Below, piece after piece: positions 9,480 to 31,569 of a DNA stretch of 64,000 nt (the first letter of the stretch is position 1; each line of letters starts with the position of its first letter). Source of the stretch: Octopus sinensis (Eukaryota); contig NC_042998.1 in the NCBI RefSeq assembly GCF_006345805.1, forward strand, positions 171,678,001-171,742,000. Direction: 5' to 3'. The translations under genes were made by a program, and so were the position numbers. The notes under the pieces are model-generated. The model was not told where the DNA came from, did not search any database, and saw only the letters and a program-made list of their open reading frames with translations.

Positions 9480-10425
9480 TATAAAATAGTGTACATGTAA
9501 ACACCAGTGAAAACTACTTTTAACAGGAAATGTTTACCCGTTAGAAGAAGCAGTCAAAACGAGTACTGATTATACACTGGTATATAGAATTTATAATTTT
9601 AGAGTTACTTGACATAAACTTAATTCTGTTGGAATTGACTTCAGATACAATAACCTTGTTATCCACATTTCTAGAGGGATGGATGGTATAAGCTAAATTA
9701 ATGTTAGTATTAGTAAATGTATTAATATTTAACAGCTTGTTATTACGTGAGGAGATAATTTGTAAGAGTACTCTTAATAAAGTACGATTTTACATTGGAA
9801 GCACGTCGTTACAGCTATCCAAAAGAATTTCTATCCATTACTCAACATTTAGGGATAGGAATAAACGTAACAGTACAGGGCTCAGTAAATTAATTTGCGA
9901 TCTAAAAGACCACAATGAACAATTTAATTTAGAATGGTTGACTCTCTCAATCTCGATACCTTCTGACAAAGGAATTCTGTCTTCTCTGTAATTCTGAACT
10001 ATTTTTCATCATTTTTTCTAAAAATCCCCTAGTAAATACGGTTATAGAGCGTGTACCGATGTAAACACTGGCAAAAACACATCTTTAGTTCATATAAGTA
10101 ATCTCTATCATTATATATAATTTAAACATTAATTTTCTTTTTATATTTAACATTCACTAAAAAGAATATCCCTCCCCTTTCTTTAGGCTTCTTCTAACGT
10201 TATATCATATAACGTTTTTCAAACAATATTAATAGCGTTCAGTAAATCACTATACATATCCATCACTTTCTGTTAAAATGTCTTATTGACGAGTTTTATT
10301 TCTTCACTTCCATGAAGAGAAAATTACATTGCTTTATACCATTTATTCCTTTGGAATAATATCAGTGAAATCTTCGAAACATGTGTCGGAAGTAAAAGTA
10401 TTTGAATTATACCTGCGTTAAACTC
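9480..10425 (+). mobile_element. PLE 3' fragment: GIY-YIG remnant plus degenerate hammerhead
   Basis: ORF 9701-9991 reads ICKSTLNKVRFYIGSTS...NSTGLSKLICDLKD...EW. A hammerhead-like motif lies at 10307-10392 (cttcc atgaaga...ttc GAAA catgtg TC ggaag). Confidence 0.75.
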
Positions 10426-10484
10426 CATTTATATATATATATATATATATATATTAACATATATTAATATATATATATACATAA

Positions 10485-10529
<45 letters not shown>

Positions 10530-10570
10530 TATAAATATGTATATATATATATATATATGAATATGAATAT

Positions 10571-10928
10571 CTCTTATATAAAATCCATTCGGTGTGTGTG
10601 TGGCTTCTATGATCTCGGGCATCCTCCATCCGATTGCGCTCAAATTTGATATGTAGATACCGACGGTATCAGGGCGTGTATAAATCTTGAAAAAATTACA
10701 AAAATCGATTCCAGGAGAGAATGAGATCGATAAAGCCGTGGGAAATCGTTTTTCTTTGGAATAGAAAAATAAGTCTATCGTTATTTCTTCTTTTGCTGGT
10801 GTCTCAAATTTAGGTTAAATCGGTGTTTCTCAAAGGGACGGTCGGACAAGTTATTTTGAGAAAGTTTGGTTTGAATGTTTGATAACTCAGCACCGTCCAT
10901 TGGACGGGGGAAGAGGCATTTTGCTCGT
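10571..10928 (+). mobile_element. Short non-autonomous Helitron-like element
   Basis: Starts tctcttatataaaa. It has a subterminal hairpin (ccgtcc-attg-gacgg) and a CTCG end, and lies in (TA)n. Confidence 0.5.
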
Positions 10929-10966
<38 letters not shown>

Positions 10967-10970
10967 TATA

Positions 10971-11016
<46 letters not shown>

Positions 11017-11599
11017 AAGAGTGAAAAAACTAACGAAAGCTTGTGTTATATGGTTATAGAATATATTTAAATCGTTATGTTAGAAAAATGTTATAAAATT
11101 TTGCGTATAGTAACATAGTTTTTGGAGAAATAACCGGTTTCGTATTGTCATTTCAAATTTCTCAATTTTCTTTACCTATATCGTGTCATGTCTTCTCTAT
11201 GTTGTGAAATATAGAGTTCCAAGCAGGGGAAGGTAATCAGGGATTTTTTTTCCGTTATGAGGGAGATAATCTAAAATTTTGGGAATGACTAGGCTTGAGT
11301 AATTTAACATGATTTGGTTTAGAAGGAACAGAGTGTTACGAGTGGTTAGGTTTTGCTTTATATTTTTTTCAATGAGGTAAGTTTCCTTATTTAAAAATGT
11401 TAGAATGGTTAAGTTTTAGCTAATATTTTTCAACGAAGAAGGTTTCTTATATATATCTATATCTTATATATATATATATATATAATATATATATATATAT
11501 TATATATGAATCATCAGCCCTCAGTCAAATCCGTCCTACACATAGTAGCATGTCAAGCAGACATGAAATGACGATGATGATGATGACAATATTATGAAG

Positions 11600-11632
<33 letters not shown>

Positions 11633-11824
11633 TATATATATATATATAATAATAAATATTACGGAATAAATCCAAATTACAGGGAAAAAATCAGATTTAG
11701 GATTAAATCCAATTTTATAGTAAAATATTATAAAAATTATTAGAGACAAAACCACTATTTTGCAAAAAAAACAAGGAAAGACTTAATCAATACATAAAAT
11801 TTTAATAAATAGTCAAAAAAACCG

Positions 11825-11867
11825 CCACTACAATTGTTTCTTGTCTTGATCGGCAATCTTCAGGTGG
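11825..11867 (-). ncRNA. Minimal type I hammerhead ribozyme, copy 1
   Basis: Minus strand: ccac CTGAAGA ttgccgatcaagacaa GAAA caattg TA gtgg. Stem I is ccac/gtgg and stem III is the palindrome caattg. Confidence 0.85.
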
Positions 11868-12326
11868 ACTTCCAATCTAAAATATCAATATTTTAAAATA
11901 TAAAAATAATAATTTTAAAATAATTAAAGTATGAATGAAAAAATATAAATATATAATCCATATATAACCTATATATAATCCATATATAATCAATATATCA
12001 ATATATAAACTAAAATAAACCTATCAACAATTAAATAACAAAATAAATATAAAATATAAAATATAAAACAACAAAAAAATAATAATAATATAATAATAAA
12101 CTATATATACACCCATACACATATACCTAATTATATATAACCATATCTAACTACATACACTAAATCACACACCTATATATATATCCCTATACATACACAT
12201 AAAAACGTCTAGGCAACTATAAATAAATAAAATAGCTAAATACTTCAACACAATACTTATTCATACTCCCACACACACACACACACAACCCACATTCACG
12301 CTCTAGAAAACGGACATCACTTAAAA

Positions 12327-13925
12327 TTATGAACGGAGAAATGGAATAAATGGAATTAAAAATTATATTCACTTGGTAAAACGAACACTACTTAAAAATT
12401 ATGAATGAAACAATGCAATAAAACAACAGACATCGCAAATAGACACAAATACTACTACGAATTCCTTAACAAACCTACCATGATAAACCAAAACTCATAA
12501 AAACATATAATGATAAAATCTCCCTTTACTAAACTCTATAACATACCTATATAGCAATCCCCCTAACCTAAACATTCACACACATACACACACGTAAACC
12601 ACACACCCACGACATATACAAATACCCACACCACTTACACATACCTATACATACATATAAACCTCAACATATACTCCAAAAACCCACTCAACCCCACACA
12701 GACAAATAAACACAAAAATTATGAATGGATTCTTTTATAAAACTACCATGATAAGCTAAAACTCACAAAACATAAATGATAAAACCTCCCTTTACTAAAC
12801 ACTATAACATACTTATATAGCAATCCCTTTAACCTATACATTCACACACAACACAACACGTAAACCACACACCCATAACAAATACAAACACCCACCCCAC
12901 TCACACACACCCACAAGTACATATACGCCTCAACATATACACCAAACAAAATTACTTTACCAAGGAACTTAACATATGTATAAAAAGTATAACCGCTCTG
13001 GAAACGAACATCTTTTAAAATAATGAATGGAGAAATGGAATAAATGGAATTAAAAATAATATTCACGTGGCAAAACGAACACCACTCAAAAATTATGAAT
13101 GAAACAATGTAATAAAACAACCAACATCGAAAATAGACAAATACCACGAATTCCCTAAAAAAAACCATGATAAACCAAAACTCTTAAAAACATATAACGA
13201 TAAAATTCCCTTTGCTAAACTCTATAACAAACCTATATAGCAATCCCCCTAACCTAAACATTCACACACAAAAAACACACACGTAAACCACAGACCCACG
13301 ACTTATACACATACCTATACTAACTTATAAACCTCATATACACCAAAAACCCACTCCCTCCCCACACACAAATTAACACATACATCCCAAAACCTAAATA
13401 ACAAACCCATATACACATTCACACACAAACACACACACACAACAGATACATATACTCCCTCACATATACGCATATACATACTCACTAAACTCGATATATA
13501 CAACAATATTTACACACCCACACTCATATAGATAAATAAATTATACAACTAAAAACTCACACACAATCTCATATACATAAACACTCCAATAAAAAACAAC
13601 ATTAAATACATCGTAATTAACCAGAATATCAAAAATAACAATATGACATAAGGAGAAATAAAATACATACTTACAAGTCAGCTTCAAATTATGAAGTGAA
13701 ATTAAATTCTTAGCCGTTAAAAAAATCAAACCAAAATTACGTTACCATAGAAATATAACTTATGTAAAAAAAGAATACGCGCCATGGAAAGTAAACGTCA
13801 TTTAAAATTATGAATGGAGAATAAATAATAATGGAACTAAAAACTATATCCACGTGGCAAACCAACACTACTTAAAAAAAATTTATTATGAATGGATTCT
13901 TTAATAAAACTACCATAATAATTAT
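12327..13925. repeat. Array of degenerate ~300-400-bp modules inside the pLTR (present in all four pLTR copies)
   Basis: Recurrent words ttatgaatgg/ttatgaatgaa, cacgtggc, accatgataa, tatagcaatccc, cacgtaaaccac and cctcaacatatacacc. Units lie at ~12327, ~12718, ~13021 and a partial one at ~13806. Confidence 0.85.
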
Positions 13926-15332
13926 TATATACAATTATGAGCTTTAGCTCATCTTAGCAGCTCTAACAAACAACTTGCAGTAACCCAAATCTATTCTCGA
14001 TGCCTGCCTTACTACTACACTATTCCATTCCCAATTCCAAGCAACGCTAGCCCACCACCCGGTTACAATTCCCAACTCCACCATTCATTCACAATTTCAA
14101 CGACGTTCACCTCCACAGCGCTACATATAAGCCTCAACATATACACCGGAGATTCGCTTTCAATCCGTGCGGATGGGTGAGATTATACATTGAGTGTAGT
14201 GATGGGGCTCCCATTACTATACACATTTGTACCTGTGTGGTAGTCTCCATGTGTATATTCACGCACGGGTATAAATGCAAGGGGTACACGCGCACGGCAT
14301 GTACGTGTACCCCCTCACATGTACATATGCATGCTAGTTGGGCTCGATATGTGCAACAATGTAATCGCGCCCGCATACATGCATATGGGCGAGTTGCACA
14401 ATCAAAATACGCACACGTGTGTGTGTGCGTTCCCTGGTTGTGCAATTCACCCATCTGGGTGTGAGTGGTGTAAGCGTATTGCTGTGGATGTCGAGCTTGA
14501 TACGTATGTATATGAGTGTGTATTGGGGGTTGTACGTATTTATTGTGTGCATGTGCTTCACGCACGTGCGTCCATGTATGGATGAATATATTGGGATTGC
14601 TATGTGGGTGTAAATTGGGTATGGAGGGGGGAGTTTTGTCATTGTATGGGTGTAGGTTTCATTTGTGATGGTGGTTTGTTGGTGATTTTTAATATGTTCT
14701 GTATATTTGGGTTAGTTATGTATTATTCTAGTGTGTATAATTGTATACATATGATTGGTGTGAGTGGGATTACGCCCATTTTTGGGGATGTATGTGTTTA
14801 TTCGTCCGTATGGGGCGGGAGTGGCCGTTTGGTGTATATGTTGAGGCTCACATGCAATTCCAGGTACGCGCGAATGAAGTGGGCACTTATATTTGTTATG
14901 GGTGTATACTTTATTATAACAGACAATACCCAAATAAAATCTGTCAATTCAACATACCAAATAAAAACAAAAAACAAAGGGATCGTAAACCTTCACACAT
15001 ACATACAAAACTCAATAAAACACCACTAAATAACACCCATCAACATATAAATATATCCTCCAAAATACATATAACAAATGCATAATAAAAATACATAATA
15101 AAATAAAATAAAAAAATATATAAATAAAGAAAATAAAAAAATCTAATATAAATTATTAAAGTTTTAACATACCATAAACTGTTATATTAATATACATTAA
15201 AAATGAACTAATTAAAACAAAGAAATATCAATAAAGACTAACTATAATTAAAGCCTAGACTACATACCAAAAAATATATTATCTAAACTAATTTAAACTA
15301 AACTAAAGTAACCTAATAGGGAACTATTATTG

Positions 15333-17847
15333 CTATTTATCATGAAACTTATTATATAGGTAAAGTAACTTATGTCTGCATTTTATTTTGCGCTCTTCAC
15401 CAGTATTAAGTAAATTATCATACTTATAAAATAAAATTTCTTTAAACTCATTAGAGCATAAATAACAACAATTAGCTCCTATAGTATATGATTTAGTTTT
15501 ACAAATTATTTCCCAAATTAAACTATAATTAATATTTAGTGATTTAAGACTCCAAATGTACTTACTAAGTCCAGTTGAGTTGATTAAGTTTTTATTTTTA
15601 AAAGAATTCATATGTTGTGCGATTCTTAGTTTTATTTTTGAGGAAGTAGAACCTATATAAACCGCTTTTGGGTAATTATTATTCTTAAAGTTATTATCAT
15701 GTAATGTAACTATACATTTATACACTACATCGTTAATATCACAATTATTATTTAATATACAATTAGATTTATCTCTACATGTACAATTAATATAAGTCTT
15801 ATCATTATTAATATTATTATCAAATAATTTCTTTTTATAAAAATTATTCAGTTTATATTTATTAAATGAAGAAATAATGTTACCAACATTATTAGTGGTA
15901 GAATAACCAACTCCAAAATTATTAAAAGAGAAAATGTTTCTATATTTACGATTAACTCTAATAAATAGTTCTATAACATCTAAAATCTCTTTAATAATAT
16001 TCGTTTTTACTTGATCTCCATAAGGAACTATTAACCAAATTTATTCTTAATAACCTTATTATTATTATCATTATTATAAAATATTTATAATTCTTTATTT
16101 TATTAAAATTATTATCAAAATTATATCTATGTACAGCATTTAAGGAATTATTAATATTATTAATTTTATCAATATAATTATTATAATAATTATTAAATTT
16201 ATTTTTATTTTTATTATTCTTATTTATATTATTATTATTATTATATTTATTATTATTATTATTATTCTTATTTATATTTTTATCATTTTTATTATTTTTT
16301 TTATAATATCTATTATTTTTACCACTAAACCTAACAAAATTATAATTATTATTAGAAGTATCTCGAAAATTATCAATTAAATCTTTATCACTAATATTAT
16401 AAAATTTAATATTCCTATTATAACCTGCCCCTCTAAGGGCCTCATTATAATAATTAGCATGTTTATTAAAAATATCTATATCATAAGAGAGTAATGAAAT
16501 ACGTTTACTTATATTATTAATCAACGATTTTTTAATAGAAAATGGGTGATTACTATTAACATTTATATATCTAAGGTTCTCATTAAGTTTATGATATGGT
16601 TGTGTTTTACCTGTAATAAGATTAAAATTAACATCTAAATAATTAACATTATAATTCTCCTTATATATAGTAATACTTAAACCATATCTTTTAAAGAAAC
16701 TATATAGTTTTTTCTTATATACTTCTAGATTCCTATTAGTACAATTCTTTGTAACTAGTAGAAGATCGTCTCTATATAAACCACCCTCTATCTTATGATT
16801 TTCTAATTGGAGTTCAGATAAAAGAAAAATACCTACTAAATCAGTAGCCTGTGCAGAATCTGGTGCTCCCATAGGTATATCAAAACAATCTCTAGTATCA
16901 TTCCTAGCCCATAATTTATTTTTATATTAATTAGCGATTTCCTAGCCATTTTAATTACATTAACTTCTTCCCGTGACATACCCACTTTATTCATTGCGAA
17001 AATAAGCGCTTTATTAAACACAATTTCATTAATAGAAGAATAATAATTATCTATATCTATTTGAATAAATTTATAACGATTTTTATCTTTAATATTATTA
17101 AACCATTTCAATGTATTATTATTACTAAACCATAATTTTAAATAATTAAGTTTATTTAACTTATCAATATATTTATCTAAAATAAATTTACTTAATTTAC
17201 CTAGGTCCGATTTACATGGGCAAATTAATCTAACTTTAGGGTCTGAATAAAAATTATCTTTATGGTCTTTAAGAGTAATTCTGGGGTGCAAAGGTACATA
17301 AGGTTCAGTTTTATTATCCAACTCATATTTTAACATTACTACTTTAGAGGCCTTATTAATATTATAAAGAATATCATCTGGAACAATTTTATATTTTTTA
17401 TTATTTCTTTTCCTAATAGTTTATCATATAATTTAACATCTAATTTATATAGGTTCCTTGTTTTATCAGATTGTACTATAATACCATCCATATTTCTCAT
17501 ATCTTTAATTTTAATTGCTAAATTCCTTAAATATTCATTATTTCTATTTGGGTATTTATGGAATTCAATATTTTTTACCACCTTCCATATACTATCTTCA
17601 AGTAATTGTAATTCTTTATTAAATGGAGGTTCCTTTCTAGATTTAAATTTAGAGGTAAAATTATCATTCCTACTATCAATATCATTAAATAAAAAAAATT
17701 ATAGTAAAAAGCTTTCCATTTAATTCTAGAAATAAAATCTTTAACATTATTAACAAGTTTCAAGATAAATTCCTTTCTAGAAGGAATAGGAATATCTTTC
17801 AAAGATGAATCCCAAAACAGCGGTTCTATCTTACCTGTAAAATCCAT
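15333..17847 (-). CDS. Penelope-like (Naiad-type) reverse transcriptase + GIY-YIG endonuclease, left copy, frameshifted in this assembly
   Basis: SDKTRNLY; RITLKDHK; IQIDIDNYYSSI (RT catalytic D); PMGAPDSAQATDLVG; GLYRDD; YLDV; YINVNSNHP; CTC-x5-C-x5-C knuckle; VYKC...VYIGST...CYLC...E...CRH. Confidence 0.9.
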
Positions 17848-18080
17848 AATTTACGAAATTGAGGTATTACACACAATATACAAAATTATCAATATTATAT
17901 AAATAATAAATATTAGGGAGTAAATCCAAATTTACAGGGAAAAAATCAGATTTAGGATTAAATCCAATTTTATAGTAAAATATTATAAAATATTATTAGA
18001 GACAAAACCACTATTTTGCAAAACAAACAAGGAAAGACTTAATCAATACATAAGATTTTAATAAATAGTCAAAAAAACCG

Positions 18081-18123
18081 CCACTACAATTGTTTCTTAT
18101 CTTGATCGACAATCTTCAGGTGG
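18081..18123 (-). ncRNA. Minimal type I hammerhead ribozyme, copy 2 (upstream of left ORF)
   Basis: ccac CTGAAGA ttgtcgatcaagataa GAAA caattg TA gtgg, about 230 nt before the ATG at 17847. Confidence 0.85.
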
Positions 18124-20437
18124 ACTTCCAATCTAAAATATCAATATTTTAAAATATAAAAATAATAATTTTAAAATAATTAAAGTATGAATGAAAAAAT
18201 AAATATATAATCCATATATAACCTATATATAATCCATATATAATCAATATATAAACAATATATAAACTAAAATAAACCTATCAACAATTAAATATAAAAT
18301 ATAAAATATAAAATATAAAAACAAACAAAAAAATAATAATAATATAATAATAAACTATATATACACCCATACACATATACCTAATTATATATAACCATAT
18401 CTAACTACATACACTAAATCACACACCTATATATATATCCCTATACATACACATAAAAACGTCTAGGCAACTATAAATAAATAAAATAGCTAAATACTTC
18501 AACACAATACTTATTCATACTCCCACACACACACACATACAACCCACATTCACGCTCTAGAAAACGGACATCACTTAAAATTATGAACGGAGAAATGGAA
18601 TAAATGGAATTAAAAATTATATTCACTTGGTAAAACGAACACTACTTAAAAATTATGAATGAAACAATGCAATAAAACAACAGACATCGCAAATAGACAC
18701 AAATTACTACGAATTCCTTAACAAACCTACCATGATAAACCAAAACTCATAAAAACATATAATGATAAAATCTCCCTTTACTAAACTCTATAACATACCT
18801 ATATAGCAATCCCCCTAACCTAAACATTCACACACAATACACACACGTAAACCACACACCCACGACATATACAAATACCCACACCACTTACACATACCTA
18901 TACATACATATAAACCTCAACATATACCCCAAAACCCACTCAACCCCACACAGACAAATAAACACAAAAATTATGAATGGATTCTTTTATAAAACTACCA
19001 TGATAAGCTAAAACTCACAAAACATAAATGATAAAACCTCCCTTTACTAAACACTATAACATACTTATATAGCAATCCCTTTAACCTATACATTCACACA
19101 CAAATACACACACGTAAACCACACACCCATAACAAATACAAACACACCCACCCCACTCACACACACCCACAAGTACATATACGCCTCAACATATACACCA
19201 AACAAAATTACTTTACCAAGGAACTTAACATATGTATAAAAAGTATAACCGCTCTGGAAACAACATCTTTTAAAATAATGAATGGAGAAATGGAATAAAT
19301 GGAATTAAAAATAATATTCACGTGGCAAAACGAACACCACTCAAAAATTATGAATGAAACAATGTAATAAAACAACCAACATCGAAATATAGACAAATTA
19401 CCACGAATTCCCTAAAAAAAACCATGATAAACAAAACTCTTAAAAACATATAACGATAAAATTTCCCTTTGCTAAACTCTATAACAAACCTATATAGCAA
19501 TCCCCCTAACCTAAACATTCACACACAAAAAACACACACGTAAACCACAGACCCACGACTTATACACATACCTATACTAACTTATAAACCTCAATATACA
19601 CCAAAAACCCACTCCCTCCCCACACAGACAAATTAACACATACATCCCAAAACCTAAATAACAAACCCATATACACATTCACACACAAACACCACACACG
19701 CAAAACACACACACACACAGATACATATACTCCCTCACATATACGCATATACATACTCACTAAACTCGATATATACAACAATATTTACACACCCACACTC
19801 ATACAGATAAATAAATTATACAACTAAAAACTCACACACAATCTCATATACATAAACACTCCAATAAAAAACAACATTAAATACATCGTAATTAACCAGA
19901 ATATCAAAAATAACAATATGACATAAGGAGAAATAAAATACATACTTACAAGTCAGTTTCAAATTATGAAGTGAAATTAAATTCTTAGCCGTTAAAAAAA
20001 TCAAACCAAAATTACGTTACCATAGAAATATAACTTATGTAAAAAAAAAATACGCGCCATGGAAAGTAACGTCATTTAAAATTATGAATGGAGAAATAGA
20101 ATAAATGGAACTAAAAACTATATCCACGTGGCAAACCAACACTACTTAAAAAAATTTATTATGAATGGATTCTTTAATAAAACTACCATAATAAATTATT
20201 ATATACAATTATGAGCTTTAGCTCAACTTAGCAGCTCTAACAAACAACTTGCAGTAACCCAAATCTATTCTCGATGCTTGCCTTACTACTACACTATTCC
20301 ATTCACAATTCCAAGCAACGCTAGCCCACCACCCGGTTACAATTCCCAACTCCACCCATTCATTCACAATTTCAACGACGTTCACCTCCACAGCGCTACA
20401 TATAAGCCTCAACATATACACCGGAGATTCGCTTTCA

Positions 20438-20817
20438 CTAAGTACGTACAACCCCCCAATACACACTCATATACATACGTATCAAGCTCGACATCCACAG
20501 CAATACGCTTACACCCACCCCTCACACCCAGATGGGTGATTGCACAACCAGGGACGCACACACACACGTGTGCGTATTTTGATTGTGCAACTCGCCCATA
20601 TGCATGTATGCGGGCGCGATTACTTGTTGCACATATCGAGCCCAACTAGCATGCATATGTACATGTGAGGGGGTACACGTACATGCCGTGCGCGTGTACC
20701 CCTTGCATTTATAACCCGTGCGTGAATATACACATGGAGACTACCACACAGGTACAAATGTGTATAGTTGGGAGCCCCATCACTACACTCAATGTATATC
20801 TCACCCATCCGCAGGAT
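20438..20817 (+). other. 380-bp spacer of the palindrome, a 5'-truncated piece of the element's hairpin-rich region
   Basis: Matches ~26712-27090 directly and ~14160-14545 in reverse complement. Confidence 0.85.
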
Positions 20818-23131
20818 TGAAAGCGAATCTCCGGTGTATATGTTGAGGCTTATATGTAGCGCTGTGGAGGTGAACGTCGTTGAAATTGTGAATGAATGGG
20901 TGGAGTTGGGAATTGTAACCGGGTGGTGGGCTAGCGTTGCTTGGAATTGGAATGGAATAGTGTAGTAGTAAGGCAGGCATCGAGAATAGATTTGGGTTAC
21001 TGCAAGTTGTTTGTTAGAGCTGCTAAGATGAGCTAAAGCTCATAATTGTATATAATAATTTATTATGGTAGTTTTATTAAAGAATCCATTCATAATAAAT
21101 TTTTTTTAAGTAGTGTTGGTTTGCCACGTGGATATAGTTTTTAGTTCCATTTATTCTATTTCTCCATTCATAATTTTAAATGACGTTTACTTTCCATGGC
21201 GCGTATTCTTTTTTTACATAAGTTATATTTCTATGGTAACGTAATTTTGGTTTGATTTTTTTAACGGCTAAGAATTTAATTTCACTTCATAATTTGAAGC
21301 TGACTTGTAAGTATGTATTTTATTTCTCCTTATGTCATATTGTTATTTTTGATATTCTGGTTAATTACGATGTATTTAATGTTGTTTTTTATTGGAGTGT
21401 TTATGTATATGAGATTGTGTGTGAGTTTTTAGTTGTATAATTTATTTATCTGTATGAGTGTGGGTGTGTAAATATTGTTGTATATATCGAGTTTAGTGAG
21501 TATGTATATGCGTATATGTGAGGGAGTATATGTATCTGTTGTGTGTGTGTGTTTTGCGTGTGTGTGTGTTTGTGTGTGAATGTGTATATGGGTTTGTTAT
21601 TTAGGTTTTGGGATGTATGTGTTAATTTGTCTGTGTGGGGAGGGAGTGGGTTTTTGGTGTATATTGAGGTTTATAAGTTAGTATAGGTATGTGTATAAGT
21701 CGTGGGTCTGTGGTTTACGTGTGTGTTTTTGTGTGTGAATGTTTAGGTTAGGGGGATTGCTATATAGGTTTGTTATAGAGTTTAGCAAAGGGAGATTTTA
21801 TCGTTATATGTTTTTAAGAGTTTTGGTTTATCATGGTTTTTTTTAGGGAATTCGTGGTAATTTGTCTATTTTCGATGTTGGTTGTTTTATTACATTGTTT
21901 CATTCATAATTTTTGAGTGGTGTTCGTTTTGCCACGTGAATATTATTTTTAATTCCATTATTCCATTCTCCATTCATTATTTTAAAAGATGTTCGTTTCC
22001 AGATCGGTTATACTTTTTATACATATGTTAAGTTCCTTGGTAAAGTAATTTTGTTTGGTGTATATGTTGAGGCGTTATGTACTTGTGGGTTGTGTGTGAG
22101 TGGGGTGGGTGTTTGTATTTGTTATGGGTGTGTGGTTTACGTGTGTGTATTTGTGTGTGAATGTATAGGTTAAAGGGATTGCTATATAAGTATGTTATAG
22201 TGTTTAGTAAAGGGAGGTTTTATCATTTATGTTTTGTGAGTTTTAGCTTATCATGGTAGTTTTATAAAAGAATCCATTCATAATTTTTGTGTTTATTTGT
22301 CTGTGTGGGGTTGAGTGGGTTTTGGAGTATATGTTGAGGTTTATATGTATGTATAGGTATGTGTAAGTGGTGTGGGTATTTGTATATGTCGTGGGTGTGT
22401 GGTTTACGTGTGTGTATTTGTGTGTGAATGTTTAGGTTAGGGGGATTGCTATATAGGTATGTTATAGAGTTTAGTAAAGGAGATTTTATCATTATATGTT
22501 TTTATGAGTTTTGGTTTATCATGGTAGGTTTGTTAAGGAATTCGTAGTAATTTGTGTGTATTTGCGATGTCTGTTGTTTTTATTGCATTGTTTTATTCAT
22601 AATTTTTAAGTAGTGTTCGTTTTACCAAGTGAATATAATTTTTAATTCCATTTATTCCATTTCTCCGTTCATAATTTTAAGTGATGTCCGTTTTCTAGAG
22701 CGTGAATGTGGGTTGTATGTGTGGTGTGTGGGAGTATGAATAAGTATTGTGTTGAAGTATTTAGCTATTTTATTTATTTATAGTTGCCTAGACGTTTTTA
22801 TGTGTATGTATAGGGATATATATATAGGTGTGTGATTTAGTGTATGTAGTTAGATATGGTTATATATAATTAGGTATATGTGTATGGGTGTATATAAGTT
22901 TATTATTATATTATTATTATTTTTTTGTTTTGTTTTATATTTTATATTTTATATTTTATATTTAATTGTTGATAGGTTTATTTTAGTTTATATATTGTTT
23001 ATATATTGATTATATATGGATTATATGTAGGTTATATATGGATTATATATTTATATTTTTTCATTCATACTTTAATTATTTTAAAATATTATTTTTATAT
23101 TTTTTAAATATTGATATTTTAGATTGGAATT

Positions 23132-23174
23132 CCACCTGAAGATTGTCGATCAAGATAAGAAACAATTGTAGTGG
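23132..23174 (+). ncRNA. Minimal type I hammerhead ribozyme, copy 3 (upstream of right ORF)
   Basis: ccac CTGAAGA ttgtcgatcaagataa GAAA caattg TA gtgg. Confidence 0.85.
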
Positions 23175-23407
23175 CGGTTTTTTTGACTATTTATTAAAAT
23201 CTTATGTATTGATTAAGTCTTTCCTTGTTTGTTTTGCAAAATAGTGGTTTTGTCTCTAATAATATTTTATAATATTTTACTATAAAATTGGATTTAATCC
23301 TAAATCTGATTTTTTCCCTGTAAATTTGGATTTACTCCCTAATATTTATTATTTATATAATATTGATAATTTTGTATATTGAGTGTAATACCTCAATTTC
23401 GTAAATT

Positions 23408-25910
23408 ATGGATTTTACAGGTAAGATAGAACCGCTGTTTTGGGATTCATCTTTGAAAGATATTCCTATTCCTTCTAGAAAGGAATTTATCTTGAGACTT
23501 GTTAATAATGTTAAAGATTTTATTTCTAGAATTAAATGGAAAGCTTTTTACTATAATTTTTATTTATTTAATGATATTGATAGTAGGAATGATAATTTTA
23601 CCTCTAAATTTAAATCTAGAAAGGAACCTCCATTTAATAAAGATTACAATTACTTGAAGATAGTATATGGAAGGTGGTAAAATATTGAATTCCATAAACC
23701 CAAATAGAAATAATGAATATTTAAGGAATTTAGCAATTAAAATTAAAGATATGAGAAATATGGATGGTATTATAGTACAATCTGATAAAACAAGGAACCT
23801 ATATAAATTAGATGTTAAATTATATGATAAACTATTAGGAAAAGAAATAATTAAAAAATATAAAATTTTTCCAGATGATATTCTTTATAATATTAATAAG
23901 GCCTCTAAAGTAGTAATGTTAAAATATGAGTTGGATAATAAAACTGAACCTTATGTACCTTTGCACCCCAGAATTACTCTTAAAGACCATAAAGATAATT
24001 TTTATTCAGACCCTAAAGTTAGATTAATTTGCCCATGTAAATCGGACCTAGGTAAATTAAGTAAATTTATTTTAGATAAATATATTGATAAGTTAAATAA
24101 ACTTAATTATTTAAAATTATGGTTTAGTAATAATAATACATTGAAATGGTTTAATAATATTAAAGATAAAAATCGTTATAAATTTATTCAAATAGATATA
24201 TATAATTATATTCTTCTATTAATGAAATTGTGTTTAATAAAGCGCTTATTTTCGCAATGAATAAAGTGGGTATGTCACGGGAAGAAGTTAATGTAATTAA
24301 AATGGCTAGGAAATCGCTAATTAAATATAAAAATAAATTATGGGCTAGGAATGATACTAGAGATTGTTTTGATATACCTATGGGAGCACCAGATTCTGCA
24401 CAGGCTACTGATTTAGTAGGTATTTTTCTTTTATCTGAACTCCAATTAGAAAATCATAAGATAGAGGGTGGTTTATATAGAGACGGTCTTCTACTAGTTA
24501 CAAAGAATTGTACTAATAGGAATCTAGAAGTATATAAGAAAAAACTATATAGTTTCTTTAAAAGATATGGTTTAAGTATTACTATATATAAGGAGAATTA
24601 TAATGTTAATTATTTAGATGTTAATTTTAATCTTATTACAGGTAAAACACAACCATATCATAAACTTAATGAGAACCTTAGATATATAAATGTTAATAGT
24701 AATCACCCATTTTCTATTAAAAAATCGTTGATTAATAATATAAGTAAACGTATTTCATTACTCTCTTATGATATAGATATTTTTAATAAACATGCTAATT
24801 ATTATAATGAGGCCCTTAGAGGGGCAGGTTATAATAGGAATATTAAATTTTATAATATTAGTGATAAAGATTTAATTGATAATTTTCGAGATACTTCTAA
24901 TAATAATTATAATTTTGTTAGGTTTAGTGGTAAAAATAATAGATATTATAAAAAAAATAATAAAAATGATAAAAATATAAATAAGAATAATAATAATAAT
25001 AAATATAATAATAATAATAATATAAATAAGAATAATAAAAATAAAAATAAATTTAATAATTATTATAATAATTATATTGATAAAATTAATAATATTAATA
25101 ATTCCTTAAATGCTGTACATAGATATAATTTTGATAATAATTTTAATAAAATAAAGAATTATAATATATTTATAATAATGATAATAATAATAAGGTTATT
25201 AAGAATAAAATTTGGTTAATAGTTCCTTATGGAGATCAAGTAAAAACGAATATTATTAAAGAGATTTTAGATGTTATAGAACTATTTATTAGAGTTAATC
25301 GTAAATATAGAAACATTTTCTCTTTTAATAATTTTGGAGTTGGTTATTCTACCACTAATAATGTTGGTAACATTATTTCTTCATTTAATAAATATAAACT
25401 GAATAATTTTTATAAAAAATTATTTGATAATATATTAATAATGATAAGACTTATATTAATTGTACATGTAGAGATAAATCTAATTGTATATTAAATAATA
25501 ATTGTGATATTAACGATGTAGTGTATAAATGTATAGTTACATTACATGATAATAACTTAAGAATAATAATTATCCAAAAGCGGTTATATAGTTTCTACTT
25601 CCTCAAAAATAAAACTAAGAATCGCACAACATATGAATTCTTTTAAAAATAAAAACTTAATCAACTCAACTGGACTTAGTAAGTACATTTGGAGTCTTAA
25701 ATCACTAAATATTAATTATAGTTTAATTTGGGAAATAATTTGTAAAACTAAATCATATACTATAGGAGCTAATTGTTGTTATTATGCTCTAATGAGTTTA
25801 AAGAAATTTTATTTTATAAGTATGATAATTTACTTAATACTGGTGAAGAGCGCAAAATAAAATGCAGACATAAGTTACTTTACCTATATAATAAGTTTCA
25901 TGATAAATAG
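23408..25910 (+). CDS. Penelope-like (Naiad-type) RT + GIY-YIG, right copy, frameshifted; YRDD reads YRDG here
   Basis: ORF pieces 23408-23680, 23667-24260, 24230-25219 and 25633-25860. The region between them translates IWLIVPYGDQVKTNII...CTCRDKSNC...VVYKC. Stop TAG at ~25908. Confidence 0.9.
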
Positions 25911-28900
25911 CAATAATAGTTCCCTATTAGGTTACTTTAGTTTAGTTTAAATTAGTTTAGATAATATATTTTTTGGTATGTAGTCTAGGCTTTAATTATA
26001 GTTAGTCTTTATTGATATTTCTTTGTTTTAATTAGTTCATTTTTAATGTATTAATATAACAGTTTATGGTATGTTAAAACTTTAATAATTTATATTAGAT
26101 TTTTTTTTTCTTTATTTATTTTTTTATTTTTATTTTTATTTTATTTTATTATATTGTTTTTTTATTATGCATTTGTTATATGTATTTTGGAGGATATATT
26201 TATATGTTGATGGGTGTTATTTAGTGGTGTTTTTATTGAGTTTTGTATGTATGTGTGAAGGTTTACGATCCCTTTGTTTTTTGTTTTTTATTTGGTATGT
26301 TGAATTGACAGATTTTATTTGGGTATTGTCTGTTATAATAAAGTATACACACCCATAACAAATATAAGTGCCCACTTCATTCGCGCGTACCTGGAATTGC
26401 ATGTGAGCCTCAACATATACACCAAACGGCCACTCCCGCCCCATACGGACGAATAAACACATACATCCCCAAAAATGGGCGTAATCCCACTCACACCAAT
26501 CATATGTATACAATTATACACACTAGAATAATACATAACTAACCCAAATATACAGAACATATTAAAAATCACCAACAAACCACCATCACAAATGAAACCT
26601 ACACCCATACAATGACAAAACTCCCCCCTCCATACCCAATTTACACCCACATAGCAATCCCAATATATTCATCCATACATGGACGCACGTGCGTGAAGCA
26701 CATGCACACAATAAATACGTACAACCCCCATACACACTCATATACATACGTATCAAGCTCGACATCCACAGCAATACGCTTACACCCACTCACACCCAGA
26801 TGGGTGAATTGCACAACCAGGGAACGCACACACACACGTGTGCGTATTTTGATTGTGCAACTCGCCCATATGCATGTATGCGGGCGCGATTACATTGTTG
26901 CACATATCGAGCCCAACTAGCATGCATATGTACATGTGAGGGGGTACACGTACATGCCGTGCGCGTGTACCCCTTGCATTTATACCCGTGCGTGAATATA
27001 CACATGGAGACTACCACAGGTACAAATGTGTATAGTAATGGGAGCCCCATCACTACACTCAATGTATAATCTCACCCATCCGCACGGATGTGAAAGCGAA
27101 TCTCCGGTGTATATGTTGAGGCTTATATGTAGCGCTGTGGAGGTGAACGTCGTTGAAATTGTGAATGAATGGGTGGAGTTGGGAATTGTAACCGGGTGGT
27201 GGGCTAGCGTTGCTTGGAATTGGGAATGGAATAGTGTAGTAGTAAGGCAGGCATCGAGAATAGATTTGGGTTACTGCAAGTTGTTTGTTAGAGCTGCTAA
27301 GATGAGCTAAAGCTCATAATTGTATATAATAATTTATTATGGTAGTTTTATTAAAGAATCCATTCATAATAATTTTTTTTAAGTAGTGTTGGTTTGCCAC
27401 GTGGATATAGTTTTTAGTTCCATTTATTCTATTTCTCCATTCATAATTTTAAATGACGTTTACTTTCCATGGCGCGTATTCTTTTTTTACATAAGTTATA
27501 TTTCTATGGTAACGTAATTTTGGTTTGATTTTTTTAACGGCTAAGAATTTAATTTCACTTCATAATTGAAGCTGACTTGTAAGTATGTATTTTATTTCTC
27601 CTTATGTCATATTGTTATTTTTGATATTCTGGTTAATTACGATGTATTTAATGTTGTTTTTTATTGGAGTGTTTATGTATATGAGATTGTGTGTGAGTTT
27701 TTAGTTGTATAATTTATTTATCTATATGAGTGTGGGTGTGTAAATATTGTTGTATATATCGAGTTTAGTGAGTATGTATATGCGTATATGTGAGGGAGTA
27801 TATGTATCTGTTGTGTGTGTGTGTTTTGCGTGTGTGTGTGTGTTTGTGTGTGAATGTGTATATGGGTTTGTTATTTAGGTTTTGGGATGTATGTGTTAAT
27901 TTGTCTGTGTGGGGGGAGGGAGTGGGTTTTTGGTGTATATTGAGGTTATAAGTTAGTATAGGTATGTGTATAAGTCGTGGGTCTGTGGTTTACGTGTGTG
28001 TTTTTTGTGTGTGAATGTTTAGGTTAGGGGGATTGCTATATAGGTTTGTTATAGAGTTTAGCAAAGGGAAATTTTATCGTTATATGTTTTTAAGAGTTTG
28101 GTTTATCATGGTTTTTTTTAGGGAATTCGTGGTAATTGTCTATTTTCGAGATGTGGTTGTTTTATTACATTGTTTCATTCATAATTTTGAGTGGTGTTCG
28201 TTTTGCCACGTGAATATTATTTTTAATTCATTTATTCCATTTCTCCATTCATTATTTTAAAAGATGTTGTTTCCAGAGCGGTTATACTTTTTATACATAT
28301 GTTAAGTTCCTTGGTAAAGTAATTTGTTTGGTGTATATGTTGAGGCGTATATGTACTTGTGGGGTGTGTGTGAGTGGGGTGGGTGTTTGTATTTGTTATG
28401 GGTGTGTGGTTTACGTGTGTGTATTTGTGTGTGAATGTATAGGTTAAAGGGATTGCTATATAAGTATGTTATAGTGTTTAGTAAAGGGAGGTTTTATCAT
28501 TTATGTTTTGTGAGTTTTAGCTTATCATGGTAGTTTTATAAAAGAATCCATTCATATTTTTGTGTTTATTGTCTGTGTGGGGTTGAGTGGGTTTTTGGAG
28601 TATATGTTGAGGTTTATATGTATGTATAGGTATGTGTAAGTGGTGTGGGTATTTGTATATGTCGTGGGTGTGTGGTTTACGTGTGTGTATTTGTGTGTGA
28701 ATGTTTAGGTTAGGGGGATTGCTATATAGGTATGTTATAGAGTTTAGTAAAGGGAGATTTTATCATTATATGTTTTATGAGTTTTGGTTTATCATGGTAG
28801 GTTTGTTAAGGAATTCGTAGTAATTTGTGTCTATTTGCGATGTCTGTTGTTTTTGCATTGTTTCATTCATAATTTTTAAGTAGTGTTCGTTTTACCAAGT

Positions 28901-29400
28901 GAATATAATTTTTAATTCCATTTATTCCATTTCTCCGTTCATAATTTTAAGTGATGTCCGTTTTCTAGAGCGTGAATGTGGGTTGTATGTGTGTGTGTGT
29001 GGGAGTATGAATAAGTATTGTGTTGAAGTATTTAGCTATTTTATTTATTTATAGTTGCCTAGACGTTTTTATGTGTATGTATAGGGATATATATATAGGT
29101 GTGTGATTTAGTGTATGTAGTTAGATATGGTTATATATAATTAGGTATATGTGTATGGGTGTATATATAGTTTATTATTATATTATTATTATTTTTTGTT
29201 TTGTTTTATATTTTATATTTTATATTTTATATTTAATTGTTGATAGGTTTATTTTAGTTTATATTGTTTATATATTGATTATATATGGATTATATATAGG
29301 TTATATATGGATTATATATTTATATTTTTTCATTCATACTTTAAATATTTTAAAATTATTATTTTTATATTTTAAAATATTGATATTTTAGATTGGAAGT

Positions 29401-29443
29401 CCACCTGAAGATTGTCGATCAAGACAAGAAACAATTGTAGTGG
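29401..29443 (+). ncRNA. Minimal type I hammerhead ribozyme, copy 4
   Basis: ccac CTGAAGA ttgtc-gatcaa-gacaa GAAA caattg TA gtgg, with a perfect 5-bp stem II. Confidence 0.87.
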
Positions 29444-29563
29444 CGGTCTTTTTGACTATTTATTAAAATTTTATGTATTGATTAAGTCTTTCCTTGTTTG
29501 TTTTGCAAAATAGTGGTTTTGTCTCTAATAATATTATATATATATATATATAATATATATATA

Positions 29564-29958
29564 TACTCTTTTACTTGTTTCAATCATTTGATGCGGCCAT
29601 GCTGGAGCACCGCTTTAATCGAGCAATCGACCCCGGGACTTATTCTTTTGTAAGCCCAGTACTTTTCTATCGATTTCTTTTGCCGAACCGCTAAGTAACG
29701 GGCACATAAACACACCAGCATCGGTTGTCAAGCAATGCTAGGGGACAAACACAGACACACAAACACACACACGCATATATATATATACATATATACCACG
29801 GGCTTCTTTCAGTTTCCGTTTACCAAATCCACTCACAAGGCTTTGATCGGCCCGAGGCTATAGTAGAAGACACTTTCCCAAGGTGCCACGCAGTGGGACT
29901 GAACCTGGAACCATGTGGTTGGTAGGCAAGCTACTTACCACACAACCACTCCTGCGCC
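29564..29958 (-). mobile_element. tRNA-derived SINE, second family (other copies ~44705-45088, ~57178-57558, ~58925-59255)
   Basis: Minus-strand head ggcgcaggagtggttgtgtggtaag...ggttcagtccc (A/B-box-like). The body is shared among four copies. Confidence 0.75.
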
Positions 29959-30094
29959 TATATATATATAACAAAGTGGAGTTGTAGGGTTCCGCATGAG
30001 TGTCCCTTAAAATAGATAATAGTATTTTACGTTAACATGGTGGACAGGTCAGTTTAAGCTTCCCTACTATTATAATGTAAACCTTTTTGAACTC

Positions 30095-30530
30095 ATAATA
30101 TTCTGTGCGTGTATACCAATATTCCACTGAACTTAATAATTCCTTCTGGAAACTATCTTTTACATTTTCTTGAGAATGTATATATTTGTTGTAATCTTTT
30201 GTGCCCAATATTTCAATGAACTTGTTAAACTTTTTTATGTTCTTAACATGTTCTTGTCACCAAAGAATGTATATATATGTATTGTAGTACTCTGTGACAA
30301 TCAATATTCTGTGCGTGTTTGAATATACAGATACAATACCAATATCCCACTGAACTTTTTTATAATTCCTTCTGGAAACTATCTTTAGCATTTTCTTGAG
30401 AATGTATATTTATGTTGAAATCTGTTGTGCCTAATATTTTAAGGAACTTGTTAAACTTTCTTATGTCCTTAACATGTTCTTGTTACCAAAGACTGTATAT
30501 ATGTAATGTAGCATTTTGTAACAACCAATA
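30095..30530. repeat. Tandem duplication of ~210-230 bp
   Basis: aatattctgtgcgtg...ataattccttctggaaactatc...catgttcttgt occurs twice in succession. Confidence 0.8.
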
Positions 30531-30641
30531 ATTAACACAACAAAACTTTTACATGTTACTTTTGCTAATCTTTTTTCCAAAGAGTGAAACCGGTAAAGTA
30601 AATAAACATCTTTTAAAATTGCATTTTCAAACCTTCTTTCG

Positions 30642-30674
<33 letters not shown>

Positions 30675-30917
30675 TATATATATAATATATATATATTATA
30701 TATAATTATATAACGGGAAGCTTTATGAAAATAAACAAAAGACGAAGGCAGGTGGAAAACAAACGAACAATTGTATTAGTATGGCGCTCAGGAAATATAA
30801 ATAAAACAAGTCTTTAACGTTTCGAGCCTACGCTCTTCAACAGAAAGATACACAGAGAGAGAAAAACACAGAAAGAAGGAGAGAAAAAAAATGCGTGCAG
30901 TATATATAATATATATC

Positions 30918-30952
<35 letters not shown>

Positions 30953-30963
30953 ATATACATATA

Positions 30964-30998
<35 letters not shown>

Positions 30999-31058
30999 AT
31001 ATATATACAATATATATACACATATATATATAAAAATATATATAATATATATATTAAC

Positions 31059-31150
<92 letters not shown>

Positions 31151-31155
31151 TATAC

Positions 31156-31196
<41 letters not shown>

Positions 31197-31202
31197 TCTC
31201 TC

Positions 31203-31569
31203 TCTATATAAACGGCAGCAGTTTGTCTGTGCGTTGTGTTTTCTGTGTGTCTGTTTTCTCGTACCCTCACCCTGACCACGGCTTTCAACCGATTCTGATG
31301 AAACTTGACACACACATAGGCCCAATGTCATAATTCAAAACTAACGCAGCGAAAATTTGAAAGTTCCCCCAGTTCTGAAAAAAATCGATAAATTCGAATG
31401 GGGTCGAGAATAAAAAAAACACCACAGACTGTCTAGGGGACGCAACTCACCTTTTATTACTCTCAAAAAAAAAATTTACCATCATTTTTTTCCATTTTTG
31501 GCTATAACTCTCTAAAAATGCTTATAGTTATTTCCTTACAAACCTGAGCAACGCCGGCGATACTGCTAG
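31203..31569 (+). mobile_element. Non-autonomous Helitron-like element (second copy at ~40979-41346)
   Basis: 5' TCTATATAAA. It has a 3' hairpin (cccgagcaacgccggg in copy 2) followed by CTAG-T, and lies in (TA)n. Confidence 0.75.

What the first reader, a model, noticed from the sequence alone, without database searches (positions are those of the whole stretch)
11648..29535. 17.9-kb palindromic head-to-head dimer of a hammerhead-bearing Naiad-like retroelement
Two ~8.8-kb arms (pLTR-ORF-pLTR) are near-identical reverse complements separated by only 380 bp. The ORFs point outward and both 3' ends lie in (TA)n. Partial tandems and short inverted pLTRs are established for Penelope elements, but inversion of a complete ORF-bearing 1.4-mer is far larger than typical. 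It suggests two full-length cDNAs primed on opposite strands of one (TA)n target and joined at their 5' ends, or a fold-back duplication. Read-through transcription from either side could form a multi-kb dsRNA hairpin (siRNA/piRNA or ADAR substrate). Hammerheads spaced 6256 and 6269 nt apart could release ~6.3-kb monomers from both arms.
Basis: partly seen in the sequence, partly recalled or inferred. Interest (0 to 1): 0.9.

Follow-up and report, generated by a model that had tools for sequence, protein, structure and literature searches.

The report
Head-to-head Penelope-like retrotransposon insertion
A 17.9-kb mirror-image pair of one retrotransposon (a Hydra-clade Penelope-like element, not Naiad) sits in a (TA)n microsatellite; it is a large but otherwise typical example of the head-to-head insertions this class of elements is known to make.

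Summary
Window 11725-20437 and 20818-29545 are reverse complements (98.1% over 8785 nt). Each arm is a partial tandem (1.41 and 1.47 units of about 6.26 kb). The ORFs point outward and both outer ends lie in (TA)n. Four hammerhead motifs sit 6256 and 6269 nt apart.

Two corrections. First, the "380-bp spacer" is element sequence: the right arm runs 380 nt further 5' than the left, so the arms join directly with at most 5 nt of filler. Second, the element is not Naiad-like. Its RT is followed by a C-terminal GIY-YIG nuclease, and it carries every diagnostic motif of the Hydra clade of Penelope-like elements (Craig et al. 2021).

Head-to-head inverted copies with 3' ends outward are a published hallmark of these elements. 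I found the same layout in relatives from Argonauta hians and from another eukaryote. A Penelope-like protein has been shown in vitro to cut and extend both target strands.

The best explanation is therefore one insertion event primed on both strands of a (TA)n break. Much of the 1.9% arm difference looks like consensus error. Assembly artefact and later fold-back duplication cannot be excluded without reads.

Verdict: real, a new member of a known kind, of modest interest.

The parts
11600..11650 (.). Left target remnant: a (TA)n tract abutting the 3' end of the left arm
11651..20437 (-). Left arm: 1.41 units of the element, sense on the minus strand. Its 3' end is at about 11650 (+/-10, ambiguous within TA) and its 5'-truncated end is at 20437.
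11651..14162 (-). Left arm, downstream pLTR (the 3' part of the complete unit)
   Evidence: direct repeat with 17876-20437, 97.1%
11825..11867 (-). Hammerhead motif (CCAC-CUGAAGA-stem II-GAAA-C(AAUU)G-UA/GUGG). This copy has one C-A mismatch in stem II.
15333..17847 (-). Left-arm ORF (about 838 codons: RT, N-rich linker, CxCX5C linker, GIY-YIG nuclease), broken by 4 frameshifts
17876..20437 (-). Left arm, upstream pLTR (5'-truncated partial copy)
18081..18123 (-). Hammerhead motif, 270 nt upstream of the left-arm ATG
20438..20442 (.). Centre junction: at most 5 nt (CTAAG) assignable to neither arm, with no microhomology
20438..29533 (+). Right arm: 1.47 units, sense on the plus strand. Its 5' end is at the centre. 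Its 3' end at 29533 is 85 nt short of the 3' end used by the left arm.
20438..20817 (+). The apparent '380-bp spacer'. It is element sequence (reverse complement of 14163-14545) present only in the right arm, because the right arm is less 5'-truncated.
23132..23174 (+). Hammerhead motif upstream of the right-arm ATG
23408..25910 (+). Right-arm ORF: the same protein, broken by at least 4 frameshifts at positions different from those in the left arm
26709..29533 (+). Right arm, downstream pLTR
   Evidence: direct repeat with 20436-23275, 97.6%
29401..29443 (+). Hammerhead motif
29534..29565 (.). Right target remnant: (TA)n, followed by a SINE-like repeat

Best explanation
This is one complex insertion of a Hydra-clade Penelope-like retrotransposon (RT plus a C-terminal GIY-YIG nuclease) into a (TA)n microsatellite.

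Proposed mechanism; every step below is inferred, with its support given in brackets:
1. The element's protein, probably acting as a dimer, cut both strands of the (TA)n target.
2. Each exposed 3'-OH annealed to a TA-rich stretch near the 3' end of an element RNA and primed reverse transcription. The two start points lie 85 nt apart (the 85-nt offset itself is read directly from the sequence).
3. Each cDNA ran through more than one unit of a longer-than-unit template: a transcript of a tandem master copy starting in the upstream pLTR, or less likely a circular RNA. The two cDNAs stopped 380 nt apart (offset read directly from the sequence).
4. The two free cDNA ends were joined, or each was used as template for the other, with at most 5 nt of filler.

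The product is two 5'-truncated partial tandems lying head to head, with their 3' ends outward in (TA)n.

Shown directly by the sequence: the geometry, the clade, the motifs and the junctions.

It is a transposon insertion. Nothing suggests a host function.
For: Geometry and junctions:
- Arms, tandems and orientation.
- Both outer ends lie in (TA)n.
- The centre is a direct element-to-element join with no target DNA and at most 5 nt of filler.
- The arms have different 3' start points (85 nt apart) and different 5' end points (380 nt apart). Two separate cDNAs would give this; a mirror copy would not.

Timing:
- The four pLTR copies form a star: 46 private substitutions, 3 that group upstream copies against downstream copies, and 0 that group by arm. 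Tandem and inversion are therefore of the same age.

Flanks:
- The joined flanks align collinearly across the junction with a paralogous repeat boundary at 44676-44918 (77%, E 9e-36).

Relatives with the same layout (3' ends out in (TA)n, one side longer):
- Argonauta hians L001: arms 99.96% over 2741 nt.
- L005: arms 100% over 1189 nt.

Clade identity:
- Alignment with 25 homologues shows DKT, CxCX5C, no CCHH, CxxC..E and N..CxH, matching the published definition.
- The AF2 model (pLDDT 82) has telomerase RTs as its top structural matches.

Literature:
- An inverted 5'-truncated copy at the 5' end is common in PLEs (PMC8557442).
- Head-to-head is the most frequent inverted form (PMC3846280).
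- The PAc protein cleaves and extends both strands, initiates internally on the RNA, is predicted to be a dimer, and uses unprocessed multimeric RNA (PMC11167929).
Against: - No reads are available, so the junctions are only as good as the assembly.
- The near-equal arm lengths (8.79 and 9.10 kb) would come automatically from a fold-back duplication. Under dual priming they need an added assumption: a defined 5' end on the template RNA.
- No second copy of this family from the same genome was available, so I could not show that the two arms derive from separate templates.
- The biochemistry cited is for a Poseidon-clade element from a lizard, not for a Hydra-clade element.
- No target-site duplication can be read inside (TA)n.
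Confidence: 0.68

Rival explanations
1. Post-insertion fold-back duplication. A single 1.4-mer inserted normally and was later copied in inverted orientation by a replication template switch or hairpin-mediated repair.
For: - The arms are equal in length apart from a 380-nt loop-like centre, the classic shape of a fold-back product.
- The pLTR star phylogeny is also compatible if the duplication followed the insertion quickly.
Against: - The right arm ends 85 nt short of the left arm's 3' end, at a TA-rich element site, and is followed directly by (TA)n and unique flank. A mirror copy would instead continue into an inverted copy of the left flank.
- The two flanks are different sequences, and when joined they match a paralogous repeat boundary.
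- The same layout recurs in unrelated loci and species, and in the literature it is a property of PLE insertion, not of the locus.
Confidence: 0.12
2. Assembly artefact. Either a chimeric or fold-back long read, or two separate copies (or haplotypes) in opposite orientation, were merged into one contig.
For: - Differences between the arms are dominated by 1-nt indels (54 events, 41 of them homopolymer length changes), and transitions:transversions is 25:41. This is the profile of an unpolished long-read consensus.
- PLE tandem/inverted structures are known to trouble assemblers (PMC8557442, PMC3846280).
Against: - The palindrome stops at defined element ends. About 11.6 kb of non-palindromic sequence lies on the left and about 34 kb on the right.
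- The centre is asymmetric by 380 nt of genuine element sequence, not adapter-like or perfectly symmetric.
- The outer ends differ by 85 nt.
- The structure is what the biology of the family predicts.
Confidence: 0.12
3. Two independent insertions. A second copy later landed exactly at the 5' end of the first, in the opposite orientation.
For: The neighbourhood is a (TA)n-rich hot spot holding several other Hydra-clade fragments.
Against: - No (TA)n or any other target DNA lies between the two 5' ends. This family's 3' ends always sit in (TA)n.
- The four pLTRs are equidistant.
- It would require two separate 1.4-mers truncated within 380 nt of each other.
Confidence: 0.05

Closest known systems
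Hydra clade of Penelope-like elements (Craig, Yushenova, Rodriguez, Arkhipova 2021, PMC8557442)
   Same: Single ORF with RT followed by a C-terminal GIY-YIG nuclease. DKT in place of DKG. Divergent RT motif B. CxCX5C linker. No CCHH. CxxC before the catalytic E and CxH after the N. Insertion into (TA)n. Hammerhead present. Mollusca are among the reported hosts.
   Different: The unit is 6.26 kb, whereas the clade is 'generally <3 kb'. A relative, L007, has a 2513-bp unit. The extra length has two sources. One is a 3.3-kb strand-asymmetric, internally repetitive stretch between the stop codon and the hammerhead region. The other is an N-rich insert of about 105 aa between RT and nuclease, absent from all 25 homologues. 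The coding region has 20% GC. The first residue of the RWK motif is K in this copy.
Canonical PLE insertion architecture (pLTR partial tandem plus adjacent inverted 5'-truncated copy and one-sided 'tail'; Evgen'ev & Arkhipova 2005, Arkhipova 2006, as cited in PMC8557442; Arkhipova et al. 2013, PMC3846280)
   Same: Partial tandem forming pLTRs. An inverted copy abutting the 5' end, head to head. An extension present at one outer end only. Hammerheads inside the pLTRs.
   Different: Here the inverted copy is not a short pLTR fragment. It is itself a longer-than-unit partial tandem with an ORF, so the structure is nearly symmetric. The one-sided extension is 85 nt rather than 30-40 nt.
PAc (Poseidon clade, Anolis) in vitro system (Frangieh et al. 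2024, PMC11167929)
   Same: It supplies the mechanism assumed here: cleavage and extension of both target strands at AT-rich DNA, internal initiation on the RNA, a multimeric unprocessed RNA template, and a predicted protein dimer.
   Different: It belongs to a different PLE clade. PAc initiates 111-118 nt inside the ORF at a site not homologous to the target. Here both 3' ends lie upstream of the next ATG, in TA-rich sequence that could pair with the (TA)n primer.
Naiad clade of PLEs
   Same: (TA)n target preference, pLTRs, and tandem/inverted insertions.
   Different: Naiads have an N-terminal nuclease, a CxC domain between nuclease and RT, DKG and CCHH motifs, and no canonical hammerhead. 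This element differs on each of these points.
LINE-1 twin priming (Ostertag & Kazazian 2001; from my own knowledge, not checked here)
   Same: A second priming event on the other strand of the target produces an inverted segment within one insertion.
   Different: In L1 the second primer anneals internally on the same RNA. The result is a single unit with an inverted 5' part. It does not give two complete copies with both 3' ends outward.

Membership tests
Penelope-like elements (EN+) | Reverse transcriptase whose closest relatives are telomerase RTs | tested here: met
   The AF2 model of the conceptual ORF has pLDDT 82 and pTM 0.79. The top Foldseek PDB hits are TERTs from Candida and Tribolium, E 9e-10 to 2e-8. 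RT motifs A (FIQIDIDNYYSSI), B (PMGAPDSAQ) and C (YRDD) are present. Pfam RVT_1 is not hit.
Penelope-like elements (EN+) | GIY-YIG endonuclease fused to the RT | tested here: inconclusive
   Motifs: the invariant residues Y711, Y732-x-G734, R743, H747, E802 and N816 are present in all 26 sequences. The predicted topology is beta-beta-alpha-alpha-beta-alpha. Fold search: only a weak hit to the T4 EndoII GIY-YIG nuclease (E 0.9, TM 0.45). Pfam gives no hit. So the motif test is met and the fold test is not significant.
Penelope-like elements (EN+) | Partial tandem organisation giving pseudo-LTRs | tested here: met
   Direct repeats of 2.5-2.8 kb flank the ORF in each arm, at 97.1% and 97.6% identity.
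Penelope-like elements (EN+) | Hammerhead ribozyme motif in the pLTR | tested here: met
   A descriptor scan finds 4 motifs, one per pLTR, all on the sense strand, with 0 hits in 200 shuffles. The centroid fold shows stems I and II. Helix III is 1 bp with a palindromic AAUU loop, as described for metazoan type I hammerheads (PMC4209133). Relatives carry a hammerhead at the same position: 194 nt (L004) and 217 nt (L007) upstream of the ATG, against 270 nt here, with different stem sequences. Rfam models do not detect it. Catalytic activity was not tested.
Hydra clade | C-terminal position of the nuclease | tested here: met
   In both arms the order on the sense strand is ATG, RT motifs, linker, GIY-YIG, stop.
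Hydra clade | DKG motif modified to DKT; N-terminal RWK motif | tested here: met
   D128-K129-T130 is invariant in 26 sequences. W44 and K45 are present. The R of RWK is K43 in this copy and R in at least 90% of homologues.
Hydra clade | [quoted passage not shown] | tested here: met
   C690-x-C692-X5-C698 (plus C704) is present. There is no conserved Cys pair between the GIY and YIG strands. C796-xx-C799 precedes E802, and N816 is followed by C825-x-H827. All are invariant and match the definition.
Hydra clade | Insertion into (TA)n | tested here: met
   The relatives L001 and L005 show the same.
Hydra clade | Short element (generally <3 kb) | tested here: not met
   The unit is 6256-6270 bp. 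The paper words this as a tendency, not a definition.
Hydra clade | Phylogenetic placement with the Repbase Hydra families | not testable with these tools
   No reference Hydra-clade sequences were available, and the paper's supplements are not held.
Naiad clade | N-terminal GIY-YIG nuclease linked to a C-terminal RT through a CxC domain | tested here: not met
   The nuclease is C-terminal.
Naiad clade | No canonical hammerhead; CCHH present in the nuclease; DKG motif | tested here: not met
   A hammerhead is present, CCHH is absent, and the motif is DKT.

The most novel reading that the evidence does not exclude
Each arm is longer than one unit, contains two uncleaved hammerhead sites, and stops within 380 nt of the other. 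The two arms might therefore be the frozen product of a protein dimer copying a circular, hammerhead-processed 6.26-kb RNA by rolling-circle reverse transcription from both strands of one break. That would make this locus a genomic footprint linking PLE transposition to the retrozyme-type circular-RNA pathway. It would also explain pLTRs as rolling-circle overshoot, with no need for tandem master copies.
Probability: 0.1. Interest if true: 0.6.

Novelty: new member of a known kind. Interest (0 to 1): 0.3.

Why it matters
If the assembly is right, the locus is an unusually clean and complete natural example of the product expected from dual-strand target-primed reverse transcription by a Penelope-like element. 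That step has been seen in vitro (2024), but its genomic outcomes are mostly known from short or decayed inverted pLTRs.

It also documents a long-unit, very AT-rich Hydra-clade family in an octopod-like genome; the clade has been described mostly from cnidarians.

An 8.7-kb perfect-stem inverted repeat is a potential source of hairpin RNA and of local instability. No effect on the host is shown. None of this changes the current understanding of these elements.

Tried and rejected
- Rfam at gathering thresholds over the whole window, and at E<=10 over 11000-30500, found no hammerhead. The only hits were chance-level miRNA-like and sRNA matches in CA/GT-rich sequence. The hammerhead claim therefore rests on a descriptor scan and on positional conservation.
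- Pfam on ORF fragments, on seven homologues and on the nuclease domain gave nothing meaningful. The RVT_1 and GIY-YIG models do not reach this clade.
- PDB sequence searches with one homologue and with the family profile gave only an insignificant match (E 1.5) to a group II/retron-type RT over motifs B-D.
- Foldseek on the nuclease-domain model was not significant.
- An exact-protein look-up of a window ORF found nothing on record, so neither the source assembly nor other copies of this family could be retrieved.
- The apparent divergent gene pair in L004 is a 1.8-kb 8-mer microsatellite read as an ORF, not an inverted copy.
- Weak inverted similarity inside the 3' region (64-75%; 12410-13565 against 14420-14913) is most simply CA-rich against GT-rich low complexity. 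I did not treat it as an older inverted junction.
- An A-to-G hyper-editing signature between the arms is absent.
- A TATA-like ATATATT lies about 40 nt upstream of the right arm's 5' end. It is noted only as a lead, because it is too common in AT-rich DNA to count as evidence.
- The ORF used for searches and modelling was a conceptual protein pieced together from the open stretches of both arms. No repaired DNA was built.


Full report
**1. The observation**

A self-comparison of the window shows that 11725-20437 is the reverse complement of 29545-20818, at 98.1% identity over 8785 columns.

Each arm is itself a partial tandem:
- Left arm: 11620-14162 repeats at 17876-20437 (97.1%, period 6256).
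- Right arm: 20436-23275 repeats at 26709-29545 (97.6%, period about 6270).

The arms are therefore 1.41 and 1.47 copies of a 6.26-kb unit.

The 380 bp between the arms is not a spacer. One search also pairs 11620-14545 with 23379-20436, so 20438-20817 is the reverse complement of 14163-14545, the next piece of the same unit. The right arm is simply 380 nt less 5'-truncated than the left.

At the centre, left-arm homology ends at 20437 and right-arm homology begins by 20443. At most 5 nt (CTAAG) are unassigned, and there is no microhomology.

The outer ends abut (TA)n at 11600-11650 and 29534-29565. The right arm stops 85 nt short of the 3' end used by the left arm, at a TA-rich element site.

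**2. Quality of the sequence**

The arms differ by 66 substitutions and 74 indel events. Fifty-four of the indels are 1 nt long, and 41 of those are homopolymer length changes. Transitions:transversions is 25:41. There is no A-to-G excess.

This is the profile of long-read consensus error, not of neutral divergence, so the true arm divergence is probably well below 1.9%. The frameshifts (4 in the left ORF, at least 4 in the right, at different positions) may be partly or wholly artefactual.

**3. What the element is**

On the sense strand (minus in the left arm, plus in the right) there is one ORF of about 838 codons: 17847 to 15333, and 23408 to 25910.

Pfam does not recognise it. A search of 5.8 billion proteins finds 43 homologues at 26-42% identity over the region aligned. 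Named examples come from the octopod Argonauta hians, plus a fragment from Octopus bimaculoides.

The 26-sequence alignment shows these features:
- RT motifs A, B and C.
- An invariant DKT.
- A (R/K)WK motif near the N-terminus.
- A CxCX5C linker.
- A GIY-YIG core (Y711, Y732-x-G734, R743, H747, E802, N816) with no CCHH.
- CxxC before the E, and CxH after the N.

These are, item by item, the features by which Craig et al. defined the Hydra clade of Penelope-like elements. That clade also has (TA)n targeting and canonical hammerheads.

An AlphaFold model of the conceptual protein is confident (pLDDT 82), and its best structural matches are telomerase RTs, as expected for a PLE. The nuclease domain on its own gave only a weak fold match to T4 EndoII.

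That assignment fails.

**4. The hammerheads**

Rfam finds none. A descriptor scan required CUGANGA, a stem II hairpin, GAAA, a short helix III, UH and a stem I of at least 4 bp. It finds exactly four motifs in 64 kb, one per pLTR, all on the sense strand. Two hundred shuffles gave none.

The motif is CCAC-CUGAAGA-UUGUC(GAUCAA)GACAA-GAAA-C(AAUU)G-UA/GUGG. The 1-bp helix III with a palindromic tetraloop is the architecture reported for metazoan type I and PLE hammerheads, which are thought to act as dimers.

In two related families a hammerhead with different stem sequences lies at the same place:
- 194 nt upstream of the ATG in L004.
- 217 nt upstream of each ATG in the 2513-bp tandem array L007.
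- 270 nt upstream here.

Activity is untested. In the one PLE studied in vitro, ribozyme cleavage was not needed for insertion.

**5. How the structure arose**

The geometry is what results if both 3'-OH ends of a double-strand cut in (TA)n prime reverse transcription. Each flank is then continuous with the 3' end of an antisense cDNA, and the two cDNA ends meet in the middle.

Five observations favour two separate cDNAs made in one event:
- The arms start at different TA-rich sites, 85 nt apart.
- They stop at different points, 380 nt apart.
- There is no target DNA at the centre.
- The four pLTR copies are equidistant: 46 private substitutions, 3 shared by position, and none shared by arm. 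Tandem and inversion are therefore the same age.
- The joined flanks align collinearly with a paralogous repeat boundary elsewhere in the window.

The literature supports this reading. An inverted 5'-truncated copy at the 5' end is described as frequent in PLEs. Head-to-head is the commonest inverted form. A purified PLE protein cleaves and extends both strands, initiates internally on the RNA, is predicted to dimerise, and uses multimeric unprocessed RNA.

I also found the same layout in relatives, with 3' ends out, (TA)n at both ends and one side longer:
- Argonauta L001: arms 99.96% over 2741 nt, with ORFs in both arms.
- L005: arms 100% over 1189 nt.

That both arms exceed one unit and end close together is most simply explained by a template RNA that starts in the upstream pLTR of a tandem master copy. 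A circular template is the less likely alternative.

**6. Rivals**

- A later fold-back duplication would explain the equal arms. It predicts a mirror-image outer end and an inverted copy of the flank, neither of which is seen.
- An assembly artefact cannot be excluded without reads. It is made less likely by the asymmetric centre, the different outer ends, and long non-palindromic flanks on both sides.
- Two independent insertions are unlikely, because no (TA)n separates the 5' ends.

**7. Comparison and verdict**

The locus is a new member of a known kind: a Hydra-clade PLE in the standard PLE head-to-head, partial-tandem form.

Three things are unusual:
- Its size. The unit is 6.26 kb, against less than 3 kb for the clade. 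The excess comes from a 3.3-kb strand-asymmetric repetitive stretch between the stop codon and the hammerhead region, and from a 105-aa asparagine-rich insert between RT and nuclease.
- Its near symmetry.
- Its very low GC content (20%) in the coding region.

The proposed downstream effects (hairpin RNA, small RNAs, editing, ribozyme-released monomers) follow from the sequence but were not testable here.

Noticed in passing
window 16050-16330 (-) and 24930-25210 (+); residues about 506-610 of the ORF: An asparagine-rich insert of about 105 aa (41% N) lies between the RT and the nuclease linker. It is absent from all 25 aligned homologues and is predicted to be disordered. Similar N-rich inserts between RT and EN were reported in rotifer Penelope elements (PMC3846280).
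   Followed up: partly
window 15000-18000 and 23400-26000: The coding region has only 19-22% GC. The window flanks have 33-45%, and related loci from other species have 37-43%. This AT bias is extreme for a coding sequence in this genome.
   Followed up: no
window 12100-15330 (and the equivalent region in the right arm): About 3.3 kb of non-coding sequence lies between the stop codon and the hammerhead region, which relatives lack. It comprises a T-rich segment, a CA-rich segment (14160-14920, sense strand), then GT-rich repeats with two copies of about 330 bp at 88% identity (12299-12626 and 12994-13315). Its origin is unknown. The left arm's 5' end falls exactly at the CA/GT switch.
   Followed up: partly
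window 2721-4102 (-), 7376-7750 (-), 9713-9937 (+): There are three further, diverged fragments of Hydra-clade PLE coding sequence (33-47% aa identity to the palindrome's ORF). The (TA)n-rich neighbourhood has therefore been hit repeatedly.
   Followed up: no
window 6632-6970 and 7771-8111: A short inverted repeat (99.4%, 341 nt) brackets the nuclease fragment at 7376-7750. Its right outer end abuts (TA)n at 8112. It looks like a small head-to-head PLE insertion of another family.
   Followed up: partly
window 29564-29948, 44702-45074, 57177-57558; also 11510-11600 against 44600-44690: Copies of a SINE-like repeat occur at these sites. The palindrome sits in the (GAT)n(AT)n tract between what look like the 3' end of one copy and the 5' end of the next. 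The same two parts abut without an insert at 44676-44710.
   Followed up: partly
window 9015-11659 and 29531-32107: There are ten separate (TA)n arrays, up to 413 bp long, within 3 kb on either side of the insertion.
   Followed up: no
window 50780-51907 (-): A 375-aa open frame of ordinary composition may be a host exon. It was not searched.
   Followed up: no
window 37475-38065 (-); 5036-6481 against 35878-34430: The first is the C-terminal part of a LINE-type RT ORF. The second is a 1.45-kb repeat pair at 86.6% identity in inverted orientation, unrelated to the palindrome.
   Followed up: no
L007 1-7621; L004 780-2558: L007 is a perfect tandem array of a 2513-bp Hydra-clade element (at least 3 units, 99.98%) with a hammerhead 217 nt before each ATG. 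In L004 two tandem copies are separated by a 1.8-kb 8-mer microsatellite that a gene caller read as a 594-aa protein.
   Followed up: partly
window 14385-14454, 20554-20613, 26800-26883: A GC-rich hairpin (CACACACACGUGUGCG core) in each copy gives chance-level miRNA-family hits in Rfam (E 1-5, far below gathering scores).
   Followed up: no
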